Shown one piece after another: positions 3-60,042 of a stretch of 64,000 bases of DNA. The stretch spans positions 1 through 64,000 of IMG/VR virus record IMGVR_UViG_3300025009_000050; one strand, 5' to 3'. The position numbers were made by a program, and so were the translations under genes. Position 1 is the stretch's first letter. Each line of letters begins with the position of its first letter. Below the pieces are notes generated by a model. That model saw nothing but the letters and a program-made list of their open reading frames with translations, made no database searches and had not been told where the DNA came from.

Positions 3-548
3 AAAGCCATAGAAATATATAAGTCAGTACAAGAAATTGGAACTGGCAATTGTTCAACAATCATTGGAGAATCAATGTCATTGAGGATAGCCAGAATCAG
101 AGATATTCAACTCGTTGAAGCTGGTGTTCCATTAGACTTTGTCTTCTATGGACATGGATCAGGATATTATAAGCATCTTGAGCGTGATACTAATGGCTGG
201 GCTATGAAAACAGCCTATAGTAATGGTGCAGACAGAATGAAACTTAGTATGGATGAAATTAAACAATCAATTCCTGGATTAGTTGACATTACTTTTGATC
301 ACAGTAAGGATAATACAAACCTGATTGTAATTCCACGAGGAAGCTTGCACAAATATAAGGGGTGCGAGTTGTATCAAACTGTATATGAATGGAATCCGAG
401 TATGCATGTGCCTCACATAAAAACATTCGATTGGAATGATACAATGGCACTTGGTAGAATGCAGACTGGAGCTCAGGAGAGTATTATTCTTTCTGATGAA
501 ATTAAAGGTCTCATCAACAACTTCATTGCAAGATATGGAGGTATGTAG
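3..548 (+). CDS. Nicotinamide phosphoribosyltransferase (NAMPT/NadV-like), C-terminal part; gene starts before the window
   Basis: Frame is open from position 3 (KAIEIY...TIIGESM). FYGHGSGYYKHLERDTNGWAMK matches the NAMPT C-terminal FGxGGxL..xRDT..xAMK motif. Sits directly upstream of an NMN adenylyltransferase. Confidence 0.75.
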   Translation, partial: KAIEIYKSVQEIGTGNCSTIIGESMSLRIARIRDIQLVEAGVPLDFVFYGHGSGYYKHLERDTNGWAMKTAYSNGADRMKLSMDEIKQSIPGLVDITFDHSKDNTNLIVIPRGSLHKYKGCELYQTVYEWNPSMHVPHIKTFDWNDTMALGRMQTGAQESIILSDEIKGLINNFIARYGGM

Positions 549-549
549 C

Positions 550-1104
550 ATGGTATCAACTGGTTTCTGTATCGGTAGATTCCAACACTTTCACCTCCTG
601 CATGAGTCACTGGTACGTCCTGGTCTCACTTTATGCGATAAGTTTTTAGTTATTGTGGGATCTGCCGGTATTATACCTAATGAAAGAAATCCATTCCCCA
701 TAAATCTAAGGATTGAACTAATCCAGACGATCTTCAGTAATGAAGTTAGATCCGGTAAGCTGATGATAATGCCGTTAGCTGATCTAACAACTGAAGATGA
801 CATTTCAGAAGCATGGGGTAACTACTTGCTAACTGCAGCTAAATGCTTCCTGGGTGATACTCCTGGTATGTTTATATCAGGTAATGATGAACGCAGAGGC
901 GAATGGTTTAACCAAAATACAATTCCTTATACTCATCAGTTGATTGTGCCTAGACCACCTGGAGTACATGCTTCTGCTACAGATTTAAGGAAGATGTTAA
1001 TTGATAATAATGAATCTGAATGGAGAAAACATACAAATCCAAAGATTCATCATTATTATAATATCTTAAGGAAGGAGGTTCTGAGGTTAAGATTCGCTAG
1101 TTAA
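550..1104 (+). CDS. nadM: Nicotinamide-nucleotide adenylyltransferase (NadM-like, cytidylyltransferase fold)
   Basis: GRFQHFHLLH (GRFQPxHxGH-type HxxH motif), IVGSA, ERNPF, SAT(D)LRK. ATG at 550 directly follows the upstream stop, so the track start at 436 is too early. Confidence 0.85.
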   Translation: MVSTGFCIGRFQHFHLLHESLVRPGLTLCDKFLVIVGSAGIIPNERNPFPINLRIELIQTIFSNEVRSGKLMIMPLADLTTEDDISEAWGNYLLTAAKCFLGDTPGMFISGNDERRGEWFNQNTIPYTHQLIVPRPPGVHASATDLRKMLIDNNESEWRKHTNPKIHHYYNILRKEVLRLRFAS

Positions 1105-2740: not shown

Positions 2741-2746
2741 GATATC

Positions 2747-2760
2747 GCCCCTTCGGGGGC
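2747..2760 (+). terminator. GC hairpin with cUUCGg loop after the SPFH gene (terminator or stabilising hairpin)
   Basis: GCCCC-TTCG-GGGGC; no strong U-tract follows. Confidence 0.45.
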
Positions 2761-2764
2761 ATTA

Positions 2765-2815
2765 CGGGCTAGCTAGTGGACTAGTCAAAGTAGGTTCGAT
2801 TCCTACCACGGCCCG
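2765..2815 (+). ncRNA. Anticodon-less tRNA-like element
   Basis: Closing stem CGGGCT/GGCCCG, D-like hairpin CTAG-TGGA-CTAG, canonical T-arm GTAGG-TTCGATT-CCTAC; no anticodon arm. Confidence 0.55.
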
Positions 2816-2835
2816 CCCTGATTAAATCTAAGGAG

Positions 2836-3087: not shown

Positions 3088-3144
3088 CTTTGCCCAGCTG
3101 TGAGGGCCAATCCAGCACTAATTTACTTATATACATTTAATTCA

Positions 3145-3185
3145 GGAGCGGATGGCAGATGACAAATAAGTCCAATACCGCTCCA
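3145..3185 (+). pseudogene. tRNA remnant (acceptor stem plus start of D-arm only)
   Basis: GGAGCGG/CCGCTCC 7-bp stem followed by A; begins GGAGCGGATGGCAGA like a type-II tRNA; the interior is deleted. Ends 5 nt before the tmRNA. Confidence 0.4.
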
Positions 3186-3190
3186 TTCAT

Positions 3191-3939
3191 GGGCGTACCG
3201 GGTTTCGACGGAGCGTGAGAGTAAAACTTGCCTAGAGGTTGGTTACCATATAACCACAAGGCTTTAAATGCCAAAACTACTCTTCAAGCTGCCTAGTCTC
3301 TAATTAACTTTAGAGCTGGGAGATCAGCCCCAAAACACCGAGCTTATCCCAGCAATCGGATGAGGGTCAAAGAATGGGAGAGTCCTATCGGAAACAGTAG
3401 TTCGGAAGGGCTACAGATAGGCAATAGGTCATAGAAGGCGAAAGCAATCGCTCTTTCCGGTTTAGGACTGACTAGTAAGGTACGTAGGAGAACTATGGGT
3501 CGTTCTCTGAAGACAACCTGGTAGAGTATTAGAAACTGGCCTCGCATACATTAGTGCAACCCTAACCCATTAAGGAGTCGCTAATGATAATATGGTGGTA
3601 GGTGGCCGAAATTCAGTCCATGTAGGGTTAAAATCCCTACTCTATGGCAAATAGTTTCTTGCATCCTAAATGCAAGTGGTGGAGGTTAATAAATATCACT
3701 GGTGGCAAATTGGCAAAGCGACACGTCGGCTCTATATGTAACTAAGTGAGCTTACGGGTGTCCACCCAGAGGTTACACGCTGAAGCGTGGCTGTTATTAC
3801 AGTTTGTAGGTTCGACTCCTACCCAGTGATGAAAGTGAGCAAGCTACTTAGTGCTGCCGTTGACCACGATGGTCTATTCTAGGTAGACGGTTTAGGGTAA
3901 CAGTTCCGGACGGGGGTTCAACTCCCCCTACGTCCACCA
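3191..3939 (+). ncRNA. ssrA: tmRNA (SsrA), 749 nt, interrupted by a ~400-nt insert
   Basis: Acceptor GGGCGTA/TACGTCC with G3-U70 and encoded ACCA; 5' motif GGTTTCGACGG; T-arm GGGGG-TTCAACT-CCCCC; tag ORF 3270-3296 AKTTLQAA* after TTAAAT; helix 2a CGGAGC/GTTCCG; helix 2c TTGCCTAG/CTAGGTAG; pk4-like GACTGACTA at 3466-3474. Confidence 0.92.
3696..3830 (+). ncRNA. Expanded tRNA-like element inside the tmRNA insert
   Basis: Acceptor TCACTGG/CCAGTGA; Leu/Ser-type D-arm TGGCAAATTGGCAAAGC; stem GACAC/GTGTC enclosing 33 nt; 43-nt variable region with two hairpins; T-arm GTAGG-TTCGACT-CCTAC; no CCA. Confidence 0.7.
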
Positions 3940-3968
3940 TAAAACAAATATAAAGGAAGAAGTATAAT

Positions 3969-5527
3969 ATGAAACCAATTACTTCACAAGAATGCCTTGC
4001 AGCTCTTAAGGAAGGTATAACAAAGTTCGGCACCTATGATTACTATGATAAAGGTGTAGACAGTGTAATGTTTATACCTCCATTGCTCGACAGGTTTAAA
4101 CAAATGTCAGCTAAAGATGTTCAGAAGGTATTGCTTGAGGTACTTGAATATGAGCATGGGAAACATTTTGTTGGATTTATACTAATGTGTCTTGAAGAAA
4201 TGCCTGATGCATATTGGGATGAATTAACGAATGATCCTAGTCTAAATAAGCTATTACTTTAATAAAGTAATAGCTTTATGAGGTGATACTATGCAATGGT
4301 GTCTAAGATGTAATACATTAAGGGAAGATCATGAAAAGTATTGCCCAACATGTGTAGCTAAACTTGAAGAAGGCAGACGCATATTATTAGATTCAATTCG
4401 TACAGCTACAGAACTTATCCCACCAGATTGTCTTGTGATCCGAATTTTAAGACAAATCAATATAGACATAATCAGTCTAAAGACTGGTAGACCCTGGAGA
4501 TACATATTGTGAGGTGATTAGTAATGCAAGTACAGATCATATCTTTAGTTGGTACCGATAAAGTTGTCCGTGAAGGATTGTTCACTCTTATTTCTCCTCA
4601 TCTTGAAGAAGCTACGGCTGAAGCAGAAAAGGTTCAGCTTGTTGATCCTTATGCTGGAACAACTAAGATGCCATACCATAGTAGAGAAAGTGTACTCAAA
4701 CTCAATAACATTTATGTAGGTGAGTATAGAGTTGATACAGGTGACCCTCCATATTGCAGTTATTATACAACATGCTTAATTCATGAGTTTATTAGTCAGA
4801 TAATATTTACTAAGGAAGATAAGAAGCATTATCACACTATTGAAGCTGGCGAAGTTCATGAGGAAAAGTATATCTACGTTATTACACCAAAATAGTAGGA
4901 GGTGACGAATTGTTAAGTAACGTCTCCTTAAGTAACTTTATCTTCTGCGTAATTAATGAACCTGAAGCCAGTAACGGGTTTTTTATAATTATTAATACTC
5001 AGAAGTGTTGGAGTAATGATCATATTATTACTGATCATTATACTGACGAAGAATGGGATGTTCTCAGACCAGTTCTTTCAAAATATAACCTTATAGATAC
5101 AATGGAGTCTATTTATGAAAGCAATATGAGATTTACTCCTGATAAAATGACCCAGCTTTTACTTGCTGAAGGCTTGCAGCAGGATAGTTTATTCACTCAA
5201 TGGTGCAAAACAATCCCGTCATTTTATTAGCGCTCCTCTTACAAGAGAATAAGAACATAAGAAGGTGTATCATGCCAGTACTATTCTGGGGTTATATAAT
5301 CACAGTAGTTGTATTGTGGGTATTATGTAATTACTTTTAGGAGGTACTATATGTTAAGAGTAACTACTGATGAGAAAGAATTTACCGGAGTAAGTAGAGT
5401 AATAGTGTGTGATGATGGTTCACATCGTAATCCAAGGACTAATCTTCTTATAGAATTTACTAATAGTAGTGATACTGTTACTTTAACAGTAAATTCTATA
5501 TCAGATATTATAATAGATACGAAATAA
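3969..5527 (+). other. Run of small hypothetical ORFs (3969-4262, 4291-4512, 4524-4895, 4910-5230, ~5351-5527)
   Basis: Tightly packed ORFs with SD sites; 4291-4512 has a CxxC...CxxC motif; no function recognisable. Confidence 0.55.
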
Positions 5528-5558: not shown

Positions 5559-6782
5559 ATGATTATCAAAGGTAAGCATAATACTGCAGAAGTGTTTACA
5601 GACAATGTTGACGCGCAAACTATATCTCAAATAATTGAATTATGTAATCAGGAATTTACGATTGGTAGTTCAATTAAGATTATGCCGGATTGTCATAAAG
5701 GTGCTGGATGTACCATAGGAACTACAATGACAATAAAGAATAAGATCGTTCCTAACTTAGTTGGTGTGGACATATCCTGCGGCATGCTTGTTGTTGAGTT
5801 AGGTAATATAGATATTGATCTAAAGAATTTCGATGATTATATCACTAATAACATTCCAAGCGGTTATAACATCAATGTCTTATCAAAGTGTGATTTCAAA
5901 GATCAAATTAATAAATTACTTTGTATTAGAGGTATCAGTAAGATCGCCAAAGATTTTAATAAAGCTCTGGGTAGCCTTGGTGGTGGGAATCACTTCATCG
6001 AGATTAATGTGGATAGCCAAGATAATAAATATTTAGTCATACATAGTGGAAGTAGGAACCTTGGTAAGCAAGTAGCAGAATACTACCAGGGCAGTGCTTA
6101 CGGATACCATAGTGGATTCAACGATGATTATGAAGCTATGAAGATTGCTCTAATCAAAGGATACAAAGCAGTTGGTAAGGAACATAAAATACAAAAAGCT
6201 CTGAAGGTTCTTCAGCAAGAGTGCAAGAAAGCCTGTAGTATACCTAAGGATCTGTGTTATCTAGAAGGCACCTTAATGCAAGAATATCTTCATGATGTGG
6301 CCATTATACAGCAATATGCTAGTTTAAATAGAATGACCATGGCTAGAAGAATAGTGGAGGAATGCTTAGGATTAAGATACCGTGAGCTGGATTCCTTTCA
6401 AACAATACATAATTACATTGACCTGGAGCATATGATACTTCGCAAAGGTGCTGTATCTGCTCAGTTAGGAGAAAAATTAATCATTCCCATTAACATGCGT
6501 GATGGCAGCATCATTGCTATAGGTAAGGGAAACCCTGATTGGAATTTCTCAGCTCCTCATGGTGCAGGACGTCTAATGAGTAGGTCCCAAGCTAAAAAGA
6601 ACATTGATATGAATGATTATGTCCTAACCATGAAAGGCATCTATACTTCATCAGTTACTGAATCTACCATAGATGAAGCTCCTATGGCTTATAAGCCCAT
6701 AGAGGAGATCATCGAGAACACAGGTGATACTATAGAAATAGTTAACATCATTAAGCCCATATATAACTTTAAATCAAGCTAG
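5559..6782 (+). CDS. rtcB: RtcB-family RNA ligase
   Basis: MPDCHKGAGCTIG, VGVDISCGM, LGGGNHFIE, IHSGSRNLG, HNY, RKGA, SAPHGAGR, DEAPMAYK. Confidence 0.95.
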   Translation: MIIKGKHNTAEVFTDNVDAQTISQIIELCNQEFTIGSSIKIMPDCHKGAGCTIGTTMTIKNKIVPNLVGVDISCGMLVVELGNIDIDLKNFDDYITNNIPSGYNINVLSKCDFKDQINKLLCIRGISKIAKDFNKALGSLGGGNHFIEINVDSQDNKYLVIHSGSRNLGKQVAEYYQGSAYGYHSGFNDDYEAMKIALIKGYKAVGKEHKIQKALKVLQQECKKACSIPKDLCYLEGTLMQEYLHDVAIIQQYASLNRMTMARRIVEECLGLRYRELDSFQTIHNYIDLEHMILRKGAVSAQLGEKLIIPINMRDGSIIAIGKGNPDWNFSAPHGAGRLMSRSQAKKNIDMNDYVLTMKGIYTSSVTESTIDEAPMAYKPIEEIIENTGDTIEIVNIIKPIYNFKSS

Positions 6783-59939: not shown

Positions 59940-60042
59940 TGATGTTGCTGGTAGCATAGTAACGGTTCGAATCCGTTAACCGAGAGATAAAATCTAAAGG
60001 TGGCTGGTGCCAAATCTTAGAGGTTCGATTCCTTAGACGTCA
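59940..60042 (+). ncRNA. Tandem anticodon-less tRNA-elbow modules
   Basis: TGATGTT/GACGTCA closing stem; two GG-containing mini-hairpins, each followed by a T-arm (AACGG-TTCGAAT-CCGTT and GAGG-TTCGATT-CCTT). Confidence 0.5.

What the first reader, a model, noticed from the sequence alone, without database searches (positions are those of the whole stretch)
3696..3886. tRNA-like element with a swollen anticodon arm that could toggle tmRNA helix 2
Seen: the embedded element has perfect acceptor, D and T arms, but 33 nt replace the anticodon loop and the variable region is 43 nt. Its loop sequence ACTAAGT(G)AGCTT (3741-3753) is complementary over 12 bp, with one bulge, to AAGCTACTTAGT (3841-3852). 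The overlapping CTACTTAG (3844-3851) can instead pair over 8 bp with CTAGGTAG (3879-3886), which is the strand tmRNA needs for helix 2c. AAGTGAGC is repeated at 3744 and 3833. Inference: mutually exclusive pairings could form a switch in which integrity or folding of the tRNA-like loop decides whether the tmRNA closes, for example as a sensor or decoy for host anticodon nucleases.
Basis: partly seen in the sequence, partly recalled or inferred. Interest (0 to 1): 0.7.

Follow-up and report, generated by a model that had tools for sequence, protein, structure and literature searches.

The report
tRNA-shaped module inside giant phage tmRNA
A 244-kb groundwater phage carries a ribosome-rescue RNA gene (tmRNA) twice the normal length, with a tRNA-shaped module near its 3' end; the module most likely marks a cutting site for tRNA-processing enzymes, and the proposed molecular switch has no support.

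Summary
Window 3191-3939 is a 749-nt tmRNA gene in standard order. It has a 7-bp acceptor stem with G3:U70 and an encoded ACCA, a canonical T arm, helix 2, and the tag AKTTLQAA*. It lies in a 244-kb phage.

Embedded at 3696-3830 is a tRNA-shaped module. Its 7-bp acceptor stem and 5-bp T arm with loop UUCGACU are perfect. Its D arm is only 2 bp, so it is not "perfect". Its "33-nt loop" folds into a further 5-bp stem, leaving a 15-nt apical loop.

The loop-flank helix (12 bp) and the competing 8-bp helix exist. They are only modestly above chance (P from 0.001 to 0.16, depending on the search space, and 0.04). They are not favoured thermodynamically. They cannot be tested by covariation, because no homolog was found.

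Best explanation (confidence about 0.4): the module is a cutting site for RNase P and RNase Z that splits the transcript into a two-piece tmRNA. The break would fall at the same topological site as in permuted tmRNA genes.

The architecture is rare. It matches none of the three described tmRNA gene forms.

The parts
3191..3939 (+). Whole tmRNA gene, standard (non-permuted) order, 749 nt
   Evidence: The 5' and 3' halves were identified by reading. Rfam tmRNA gives a local hit on the 3' end (29.6 bits, E = 5e-10). The only partner for the 5' acceptor strand is at 3929-3935. MFE z-score is -2.3.
3191..3197 (+). tmRNA acceptor 5' strand GGGCGUA. It pairs with 3929-3935 UACGUCC and includes the G3:U70 pair.
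   Evidence: All 7 pairs have P = 0.78-0.93. ACCA is encoded at 3936-3939.
3198..3214 (+). D-loop analogue CCGGGUUUCGAC plus the helix 2a 5' strand. G3207-A3208 face G3909-A3910, and 3209-3214 pairs with 3903-3908.
   Evidence: Matches the Rfam consensus GGaUUCGACgg / ucGGAC. Pairs were read.
3222..3236 (+). Helix 2b-d 5' strand. 3222-3225 pairs with 3891-3894, and 3228-3236 pairs with 3878-3886 (9 bp, two of them G-U).
   Evidence: RNAduplex gives -28 to -32 kcal/mol for 3205-3262 against 3830-3911.
3270..3296 (+). Tag reading frame: resume codon GCC, peptide AKTTLQAA, stop UAG
   Evidence: Translated. A hairpin follows at about 3298-3316.
3297..3695 (+). Oversized structured body occupying the place of PK2-PK3. 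Not resolved.
   Evidence: About 400 nt lie where standard tmRNAs of 334-424 nt in the same scans have far less. There is no group I intron or other Rfam family at E <= 10, except a weak wcaG-like hit at 3614-3690.
3696..3830 (+). Embedded tRNA-shaped module. It comprises acceptor 3696-3702/3823-3829, D region 3703-3719, long arm 3720-3762, hairpins 3776-3789 and 3791-3802, T arm 3806-3822, and discriminator U3830. No CCA is encoded.
   Evidence: ARAGORN calls it only with introns allowed and a lowered threshold (tRNA-Phe with a 55-nt 'intron'). The Rfam tRNA model does not match it.
3720..3762 (+). Extended anticodon-like arm. It has an outer stem 3720-3724/3758-3762, an internal loop, an inner stem 3728-3732/3748-3752, and a 15-nt apical loop 3733-3747.
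   Evidence: Pair probabilities are 0.73-0.98. The MFE and centroid structures agree.
3741..3753 (+).
   Evidence: It overlaps the 3' strand of the inner stem.
3831..3877 (+). Linker between the module and helix 2. It holds the AAGUGAGC repeat (3833-3840), the anti-loop segment (3841-3852), and hairpin GACCA-CGA-UGGUC (3862-3874).
3878..3910 (+). 3' strand of helix 2 (3878-3894 and 3903-3908). GGAC (3908-3911) begins inside this span.
   Evidence: The Rfam permuted-tmRNA model aligns its acceptor piece from 3877 onward (E = 0.13).
3912..3939 (+). tmRNA T arm GGGGG-UUCAACU-CCCCC, acceptor 3' strand, and ACCA
   Evidence: P about 0.95. Rfam alignment.
5559..6782 (+). RtcB RNA ligase gene, 1.6 kb downstream (context only; no link is shown)
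   Evidence: phrog_1075, E = 1.7e-133. Nearest homologs are Clostridia, 66-68% identity.

Best explanation
Window 3191-3939 is a phage tmRNA gene in the normal 5'-to-3' order that has acquired, and kept, a tRNA-shaped module at 3696-3830. The module sits between the pseudoknot-rich body and the strand that closes helix 2.

The module keeps exactly the parts that tRNA-processing enzymes read. These are a 7-bp acceptor stem stacked flush on a 5-bp T stem, a canonical T loop, U8, and a GG in the D region. It has lost everything needed for decoding.

I propose that host RNase P cuts at 3695/3696, and that RNase Z (or an equivalent 3' processing activity) cuts after U3830. That would release a 135-nt tRNA-like RNA and leave a coding piece (3191-3695) and an acceptor piece (3831-3939). 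The two pieces would stay together through helix 2 and the acceptor stem. This would make a two-piece tmRNA from a gene that is not permuted.

Shown: the anatomy, the tmRNA identity, and the rarity. Inferred: the cleavages, the association of the pieces, and activity in trans-translation. The loop-flank complementarity may be a tertiary contact or a trace of a duplication. I do not assign it a regulatory role.
For: 1. The acceptor and T arm are perfect and form a 12-bp stack, with every pair at P > 0.97. The anticodon and variable regions are replaced by 33 and 43 nt that hold three hairpins. That is the pattern expected if selection acts only on the processing determinants.
2. No CCA is encoded after the module (U-GAAAG). 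By contrast, all 12 ARAGORN-called tRNAs whose T arm met the motif search, plus the 64769 tRNA-like, encode CCA. In Bacillota, CCA-less precursors are the RNase Z substrates (established knowledge). The phage's RtcB points to a Clostridia-like host.
3. Precedent: the tRNA-like module of Mycobacterium smegmatis YrlA is cut by RNase P in vivo and in vitro, and both halves co-precipitate with Rsr. The authors attribute the cleavage to its 7-bp acceptor stem, because YrlAs without such a stem are not cut (PMC4201824).
4. The break would fall between the coding body and the 3' strand of helix 2, where the two pieces of a permuted-gene tmRNA are also discontinuous. The Rfam permuted model aligns its acceptor piece from 3877. 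Permuted transcripts are cut by tRNA-processing enzymes (PMC11915505).
5. Helix 2 (about -28 to -32 kcal/mol) plus the 7-bp acceptor stem could hold the pieces together.
6. tRNAs or degenerate tRNA-like elements do lie directly 5' of acceptor pieces in some phage permuted genes, with spacers of 54-76 nt against 77 nt here.
Against: - There is no RNA evidence. The only RNA runs from these samples lay nothing on the region.
- No homolog was found, so conservation of the module cannot be shown.
- In an unbiased sample of 70 permuted viral tmRNA genes, only 3 have a tRNA within 100 nt upstream. Most have a promoter-like sequence there instead. The tRNA-then-acceptor-piece arrangement is therefore an exception, and my first count was biased by the search pattern.
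- The D arm is weak (2 bp), which could impair the tRNA elbow.
- Positions -1 and +1 are A and U, not the U and G that bacterial RNase P prefers (established knowledge).
- The one looser analogue (L058) has a stem of about 14 bp. That length does not fit the RNase P measuring rule.
Confidence: 0.4

Rival explanations
1. The module stays in a one-piece giant tmRNA as a structural domain. It would take the place of pseudoknot 4. It might stabilise the RNA against nucleases, or recruit tRNA-binding proteins such as T-loop modification enzymes acting as chaperones. The 3741-3753/3841-3852 pairing would act as a pseudoknot-like staple.
For: The module occupies the position of PK4, just 5' of the helix 2 3' strand. 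Loop-to-downstream pairing is the ordinary way tmRNA pseudoknots form. The 12-bp helix is unusual if only these two segments are considered (P = 0.0013). With helix 2 formed, co-folding of the arm and flank prefers the intermolecular duplex by 3.7 kcal/mol. Chen et al. suggested that the stable tRNA fold may protect Y RNAs from nucleases (PMC4201824).
Against: An exposed 7 + 5 bp acceptor/T stack in a bacterial transcript is expected to be cut by RNase P (precedent). The co-fold gain is matched by 26% of shuffled flanks. A 12-bp helix occurs somewhere in 16% of shuffled 749-nt RNAs.
Confidence: 0.25
2. The module is an evolutionary relic with no present function. It could be a tRNA gene captured by recombination, or by re-permutation of a permuted tmRNA locus, and now decaying. 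The tmRNA itself might be impaired.
For: The D arm has decayed, and the anticodon and variable regions are heavily altered. The AAGTGAGC repeat and the inverted copy next to it look like traces of a local duplication. The phage holds other odd tRNA-like pieces at 2765-2816, 59961 and 64769-64934. No SmpB gene was found in the phage.
Against: The acceptor and T arm are flawless although the rest has diverged greatly. That pattern argues for selection. The tmRNA keeps G3:U70, ACCA, helix 2 and a clean tag frame ending in AA-stop. The sequence is identical in assemblies from several samples.
Confidence: 0.15
3. The excised, or nested, 135-nt tRNA-like RNA is itself the functional product. It might be a decoy for tRNA-targeting defence nucleases, or a partner of the phage's Ro60/Y-RNA and RtcB RNA-repair machinery. 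The tmRNA gene would serve only as its transcription host.
For: The phage encodes Rsr (TROVE) with tandem YrlA-like RNAs, plus RtcB. The module's T arm matches the T arm of one YrlA-like RNA at 17 of 18 positions. The phage's own tRNA set includes Lys, Asn and Tyr, which are typical nuclease targets (established knowledge).
Against: Similarity to the Y RNAs is confined to the T arm. There is no YrlA hit on the module at E <= 10. There is no normal anticodon loop for a nuclease to recognise. rsr lies 64 kb away.
Confidence: 0.1
4. Three mutually exclusive pairings (loop with flank, flank with the helix 2 3' strand, and helix 2 itself) form a switch. The integrity of the tRNA-like loop would decide whether the tmRNA closes, for example as a sensor of anticodon nucleases.
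For: All three pairings exist and overlap the same 12 nt. The flank/helix-2 hairpin appears in the MFE structure. The flank is transcribed just before the helix 2 3' strand, so a transient kinetic trap is conceivable (inference). RtcB lies nearby.
Against: Ensemble probability of the blocking hairpin is 0.08. Helix 2 is far more stable than it. The chance tests are weak. Five of the twelve loop-flank positions are already held in a P = 0.98 local stem. There is no anticodon-like loop, and there are no homologs for covariation.
Confidence: 0.05

Closest known systems
Standard one-piece tmRNA (Rfam RF00023)
   Same: Gene order. Acceptor stem with G3:U70 and an encoded ACCA. The UUCGAC motif and GGAC. 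T arm with loop UUCAACU. A long helix 2. A tag frame that starts with an Ala codon and ends in AA-stop.
   Different: It is 749 nt, against 334-424 nt for the standard tmRNAs seen in the same scans. A tRNA-shaped module is embedded where PK4 should be. The full Rfam model scores below its gathering threshold (29.6 against 47 bits).
Two-piece tmRNA from circularly permuted genes (RF04321; alpha-proteobacteria, cyanobacteria, many phages)
   Same: The predicted break lies at the same topological place, between the coding body and the 3' strand of helix 2. tRNA-processing enzymes are thought to do the cutting. A few phage permuted genes have a tRNA or tRNA-like element directly 5' of the acceptor piece (L046, L088, L054 and others).
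   Different: The gene is not permuted: no 5' half lies downstream of 3939. Only 3 of 70 unbiased permuted viral genes have such a tRNA. Two-piece status here is an inference.
tRNA-Ala inside the intervening sequence of one permuted tmRNA (GCA-2688965 sp002688965.2; Nawrocki, Petrov and Williams 2025, PMC11915505)
   Same: A tRNA-shaped unit nested inside a tmRNA gene, in a segment that need not be part of the mature RNA.
   Different: [quoted passage not shown] This one is a non-decoding mimic in a standard-order gene.
Mycobacterium smegmatis YrlA (Y RNA with a tRNA-like module cut by RNase P)
   Same: A tRNA-like module with a 7-bp acceptor stem inside a larger non-coding RNA. Cleavage there gives two halves that stay associated.
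   Different: In YrlA the module is circularly permuted and the RNA binds Ro60. There is no sequence or Rfam relationship to the module here beyond a generic T arm.
L058/L086: a 595-nt standard-order phage tmRNA with an internal T-arm module (IMG/VR 3300020050_010647 and 3300020037_001483)
   Same: An oversized standard-order tmRNA, with tag ending ...ANALVAA*. It has a canonical T hairpin (GUGGG-UUCAAAU-CCCAC) stacked on a long closing stem about 57 nt before GGAC.
   Different: Its closing stem is about 14 bp with a bulge. It has no D-arm-like region. It shows no sequence similarity to the window's module, so it is an analogue and not a demonstrated homolog.

Membership tests
tmRNA (standard form) | The 5' and 3' ends form a 7-bp acceptor stem with G3:U70, discriminator A and CCA | tested here: met
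   GGGCGUA 3191-3197 pairs with UACGUCC 3929-3935, and ACCA is at 3936-3939. Pair probabilities are 0.78-0.93.
tmRNA (standard form) | T arm with a canonical T loop preceded by GGAC; a 5' GGNUUCGAC D-loop analogue | tested here: met
   Rfam alignment of 3882-3939 (E = 5e-10). GGGUUUCGAC is at 3200-3209.
tmRNA (standard form) | Long-range helix 2 joining the 5' and 3' regions | tested here: met
   3209-3236 pairs with 3878-3908. RNAduplex gives -28 to -32 kcal/mol.
tmRNA (standard form) | Tag reading frame with an Ala resume codon and a C-terminal AA before the stop | tested here: met
   3270-3296 translates to AKTTLQAA*.
tmRNA (standard form) | Score at or above the Rfam gathering threshold; four pseudoknots | tested here: not met
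   29.6 bits against GA 47, and a local match only. ARAGORN at default settings does not call it. The pseudoknots were not resolved.
tmRNA (standard form) | Alanylation, SmpB binding and trans-translation | not testable with these tools
   No SmpB gene was found in the phage, so a host SmpB would be needed.
tRNA (RF00005) | 7-bp acceptor stem flush on a 5-bp T stem with a TPsiC-type loop | tested here: met
   3696-3702/3823-3829 and 3806-3822, P > 0.97.
tRNA (RF00005) | D stem of 3-4 bp, 7-nt anticodon loop, variable region of at most about 21 nt, and a model score | tested here: not met
   The D stem is 2 bp. The anticodon loop is replaced by 33 nt and the variable region is 43 nt. There is no Rfam tRNA hit at E <= 10. 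ARAGORN calls it only with a forced 55-nt 'intron' and a mismatched stem.
Permuted (two-piece) tmRNA gene | The acceptor piece is encoded upstream of the coding piece | tested here: not met
   The only 5' half is 746 nt upstream of the 3' half, and none lies downstream (row L304). An ORF starts at 3969.
Permuted (two-piece) tmRNA gene | The mature RNA consists of two base-paired pieces | not testable with these tools
   No RNA reads are available.
Intron-form tmRNA (group I intron in the T loop) | A group I intron interrupts the T loop | tested here: not met
   The tmRNA T loop is intact. No group I hit at E <= 10 over 3100-4000.
YrlA / bacterial Y RNA (RF02553) | A permuted tRNA-like domain closed by a Ro-binding stem; a model match | tested here: not met
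   No hit on 3696-3830 at E <= 10. The order of arms is that of a normal tRNA. True YrlA-like RNAs lie at 67.0-67.3 kb.
Theta / minimal HDV-like ribozyme 3' of phage tRNAs | A nested double pseudoknot (P1, P2, P3, P1.1) that starts at the tRNA 3' end | tested here: not met
   A descriptor search of 3815-3960 found no candidate. No Rfam ribozyme hit.
RNA conformational switch | Mutually exclusive helices that are each conserved and supported by covariation | tested here: inconclusive
   The helices exist. The chance tests are weak. No homologs are available for covariation.

The most novel reading that the evidence does not exclude
This would be a fourth tmRNA gene form: a standard-order gene whose transcript is split into a two-piece tmRNA by an internal tRNA mimic. 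Maturation would be conditional. The long arm of the mimic (3723-3755) and the leader of the acceptor piece (3835-3860) compete with helix 2. Assembly of an active tmRNA would then be gated by the state of tRNA processing or tRNA damage in the infected cell, possibly together with the phage's RtcB and Ro60/Y-RNA repair set.
Probability: 0.07. Interest if true: 0.85.

Novelty: new variant of a known kind. Interest (0 to 1): 0.55.

Why it matters
tmRNA genes are known in three forms: standard, interrupted by a group I intron in the T loop, and circularly permuted (PMC11915505). A standard-order gene carrying an internal tRNA mimic would be a further form.

If the mimic is cut out, it shows a second and much simpler evolutionary route to two-piece tmRNA: insert a processing signal instead of permuting the gene.

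It also matters for annotation. ARAGORN and the Rfam gathering threshold both miss this gene, so similar oversized tmRNAs in phage metagenomes are probably under-counted.

Finally, one 244-kb phage brings together a tmRNA, RtcB, Ro60, several Y RNAs and other tRNA mimics. That makes it a compact natural system for studying how phages handle RNA damage and ribosome rescue.

Tried and rejected
- **Group I or other intron as the cause of the extra length.** No Rfam hit at E <= 10.
- **A bulge-helix-bulge intron spliced with RtcB.** The phage has no splicing endonuclease. ARAGORN's "introns" need mismatched anticodon stems.
- **A self-cleaving theta/HDV-like ribozyme after the module.** This idea came from bioRxiv 10.1101/2023.06.13.544163. 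The descriptor search found none.
- **Duplication of the tmRNA 3' end by island or prophage integration.** This explains L267, L294 and L302. It does not explain this locus, because the internal T arm differs from the tmRNA T arm.
- **A Y-RNA module.** Similarity is confined to the T arm.
- **Relationship to the other insert-bearing tRNA-like at 64769.** No similarity.
- **Searches for homologs.** All failed:
  - phage GenBank records by blastn;
  - IMG/VR through flanking proteins and exact motifs;
  - RtcB neighbours, which proved to be bacterial;
  - 401 Clostridia genomes, where only the generic 3' end matches;
  - pattern scans of IMG/VR, JGI metagenomes and GTDB genomes.
- **Reads.** DNA runs show only the same phage with no variants. 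RNA runs lay nothing on the region.
- **RNAduplex energy as a chance test.** Uninformative, because shuffled sequences score as low as the real ones. I replaced it with helix-length tests.
- **My early argument that tRNAs commonly precede acceptor pieces**. This was an ascertainment artefact, and one search corrected it.
Full report
**Where the window comes from.** The window is the first 64 kb of a 244,052-bp IMG/VR virus record rated complete. It was assembled from groundwater metagenomes. The same sequence is present without variants in several runs. A second assembly of 244,136 bp joins the record's two ends, so the genome is circular or circularly permuted. G+C is 37%. RtcB, encoded at 5559-6782, is closest to Clostridia proteins (66-68% identity, bacterial contexts). 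That hints at a Bacillota host.

**The observation.**
- The acceptor stem (3696-3702/3823-3829) and the T arm (3806-3822, loop UUCGACU) are perfect. Each pair has probability above 0.97 in a partition-function fold of the whole RNA.
- Two statements need correcting. First, the D arm is not perfect. Region 3703-3719 contains a direct repeat (UGGCAAA twice) and at most two G-C pairs. Second, the "33-nt loop" is not open. GGCUC 3728-3732 pairs with GAGCU 3748-3752 at P about 0.98, giving a long arm with a 15-nt apical loop.
- The 43-nt variable region holds two stable hairpins, at 3776-3789 and 3791-3802.

**The host RNA is a tmRNA.**
- Its 5' end GGGCGUA pairs with UACGUCC at 3929-3935. This includes the G3:U70 pair, and ACCA follows.
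- It has the GGGUUUCGAC motif, the GGAC-plus-T-arm 3' half that the Rfam tmRNA model recognises (E = 5e-10), and a long helix 2 (3209-3236 with 3878-3908, -28 to -32 kcal/mol).
- Its tag frame is GCC...UAG, encoding AKTTLQAA* (3270-3296).
- At 749 nt it is about twice the usual size. Consequently ARAGORN at default settings and the Rfam gathering threshold both miss it.
- No group I intron or other Rfam family explains the extra length.
- The gene is in standard order: there is no 5' half downstream of the 3' half.

**Are the proposed pairings more than chance?**
- The 12-bp loop-flank helix occurs in 0.13% of dinucleotide shuffles if only those two segments are considered. It occurs in 2% within the 216-nt neighbourhood, and in 16% anywhere in the 749-nt RNA.
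- The 8-bp helix that would block helix 2 occurs in 4% of shuffles.
The gain of 3.7 kcal/mol is matched by 26% of shuffled flanks.
- In the nested ensemble the blocking hairpin has P = 0.08, and helix 2 is far more stable than it.
- So nothing indicates bistability. A transient co-transcriptional trap cannot be excluded.

**Search for relatives.** No homolog of the module or of the tmRNA body was found in any of these sources:
- GenBank phages;
- IMG/VR, through flanking proteins, the polymerase or exact motifs;
- 401 Clostridia genomes.

I then scanned IMG/VR, JGI metagenomes and GTDB species genomes for any T loop 65-95 nt upstream of a tmRNA 3' half. The hits resolve into five kinds:
- tandem tRNAs;
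- permuted tmRNA genes preceded by a tRNA;
- CDS-less mini-tmRNAs next to tRNAs;
- tmRNAs followed by integration-site duplicates of their 3' end;
- chance matches inside PK4.

Apart from this phage itself (L304), only one other sequence is a standard-order tmRNA with an internal T-arm module. It is L058, identical to L086, and is 595 nt long. Its closing stem is about 14 bp and it has no D region, so it is an analogue at best. The architecture is therefore rare. Covariation cannot be tested. No RNA reads cover the locus.

**Mechanism.** The module keeps what RNase P and RNase Z read: a 12-bp acceptor/T stack, the T loop, U8, and a GG for the elbow. It has lost what decoding needs. It also lacks an encoded CCA. 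By contrast, the ARAGORN-called tRNAs of the phage whose T arms were captured (12 genes) all encode CCA.

A close precedent exists. The tRNA-like module of Mycobacterium smegmatis YrlA is cut by RNase P in vivo and in vitro, and both halves are recovered with Rsr. The authors attribute the cleavage to its 7-bp acceptor stem, because YrlAs lacking such a stem are not cut (PMC4201824).

Cutting here would break the tmRNA between its coding body and the 3' strand of helix 2. That is the same topological place where permuted-gene tmRNAs are discontinuous. Those transcripts are described as being processed by tRNA enzymes (PMC11915505).

I therefore favour processing into a two-piece tmRNA plus a free 135-nt tRNA-like RNA (confidence 0.4).

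I first thought that tRNAs commonly precede the acceptor pieces of phage permuted genes. An unbiased sample shows only 3 of 70 do, and most have a promoter-like sequence instead. That line is therefore weak support.

**Rivals.**
- A retained structural domain replacing PK4 (0.25).
- A decaying relic (0.15).
- A nested functional small RNA, perhaps tied to the phage's Ro60/Y-RNA/RtcB set (0.10).

**Things excluded.**
- A theta/HDV-like ribozyme after the module.
- A bulge-helix-bulge intron with a phage splicing endonuclease.
- A Y-RNA module.
- An integration duplicate, because the T arms differ.

**Context worth recording.** The phage encodes a Ro60 (TROVE) protein preceded by tandem YrlA-like RNAs. 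It also holds a tRNA-like with an 86-nt insert, a miniature tRNA-like 376 nt upstream of the tmRNA, and 14 ordinary tRNAs. It has no SmpB.

**Novelty and score.** The described tmRNA gene forms are standard, T-loop intron and permuted. The nearest report is a single intact tRNA-Ala inside the intervening sequence of a permuted gene (PMC11915505). A standard-order gene with an internal tRNA mimic is a new variant of a known kind. Interest: 0.55.

Noticed in passing
L036:8560-9310 and L037/L038 (genome 66.56-69.1 kb, outside the window): A Ro60/Rsr (TROVE) ORF of 539 aa is preceded by tandem YrlA-like Y RNAs. Rfam RF02553 gives 39 and 42.9 bits, both below GA 69. The motif RGUGUAG...GAGUUACUUC recurs about five times. 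This is a known kind of phage Ro/Y-RNA locus (PMC4201824), here with unusually many copies.
   Followed up: partly
L036:6770-6935 (genome 64769-64934): A tRNA-like RNA with perfect acceptor, D and T arms and an encoded CCA, but about 86 nt inserted in place of a normal anticodon and variable region. The insert includes a GGUUGCAGAG direct repeat. ARAGORN calls it tRNA-Ile(UAU) only with an 'intron' allowed. It has no similarity to the tmRNA-embedded module.
   Followed up: partly
window 2746-2816: A terminator-like hairpin (GCCCCTTCGGGGGC) lies right after the SPFH gene. A miniature tRNA-like follows: a 6-bp closing stem, a D-like hairpin, and a T arm GTAGG-TTCGATT-CCTAC that matches the tmRNA module's T arm at 17 of 18 positions. 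It has no anticodon arm. It lies 376 nt upstream of the tmRNA.
   Followed up: partly
window 59961-59977; genome 66781, 67081 and 237063: Further perfect T-arm motifs on the + strand, outside any ARAGORN tRNA. The ones at 66781 and 67081 belong to the Y-RNA array. The ones at 59961 and 237063 are unexplained.
   Followed up: no
window 3614-3690: A weak wcaG-RNA-like match (22 bits, E = 0.11, below GA 42) made of two hairpins inside the tmRNA body. Probably chance.
   Followed up: no
window 5559-6782: The RtcB RNA ligase gene. Its nearest relatives are chromosomal genes of Clostridia (66-68% identity), which suggests both the host lineage and the source of the gene.
   Followed up: yes
window 75-1104 and 1775-2740: NAD-salvage-like genes (a NAMPT-like fragment and a cytidylyl/NMN adenylyltransferase-like gene) and an SPFH/Band 7 protein lie upstream of the tmRNA.
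   Followed up: no
window 1 and genome end (L304): An independent 244,136-bp assembly runs from window position 4707 back through position 1 into the record's last 9.5 kb. The ends therefore join. The only difference is at window position 3.
   Followed up: yes
L046/L090/L256 (IMG/VR 3300028393_000792 and copies): A permuted phage tmRNA gene is preceded by an 88-nt tRNA-Met-like gene. That gene's 5' acceptor strand (GGGCCUG, and its first 9 nt) is identical to the start of the tmRNA coding piece. One 5' strand could therefore pair with either 3' strand (CAGGCCC or CAGGUCC).
   Followed up: no
L088/L288:1700-1880: A permuted phage tmRNA whose acceptor piece is preceded by a degenerate tRNA-like that ARAGORN does not call. 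The tRNA-like has a 7-bp acceptor (AUCCGGU/ACCGGAU), a D arm and a decayed T arm.
   Followed up: partly
L109, L110, L072, L108, L114 and about 20 metagenome loci (class B): CDS-less mini-tmRNAs of about 80 nt (tRNA-like domain only) lie directly after ordinary tRNA genes in viral and metagenomic contigs. These resemble the form already reported for mycobacteriophage DS6A.
   Followed up: no
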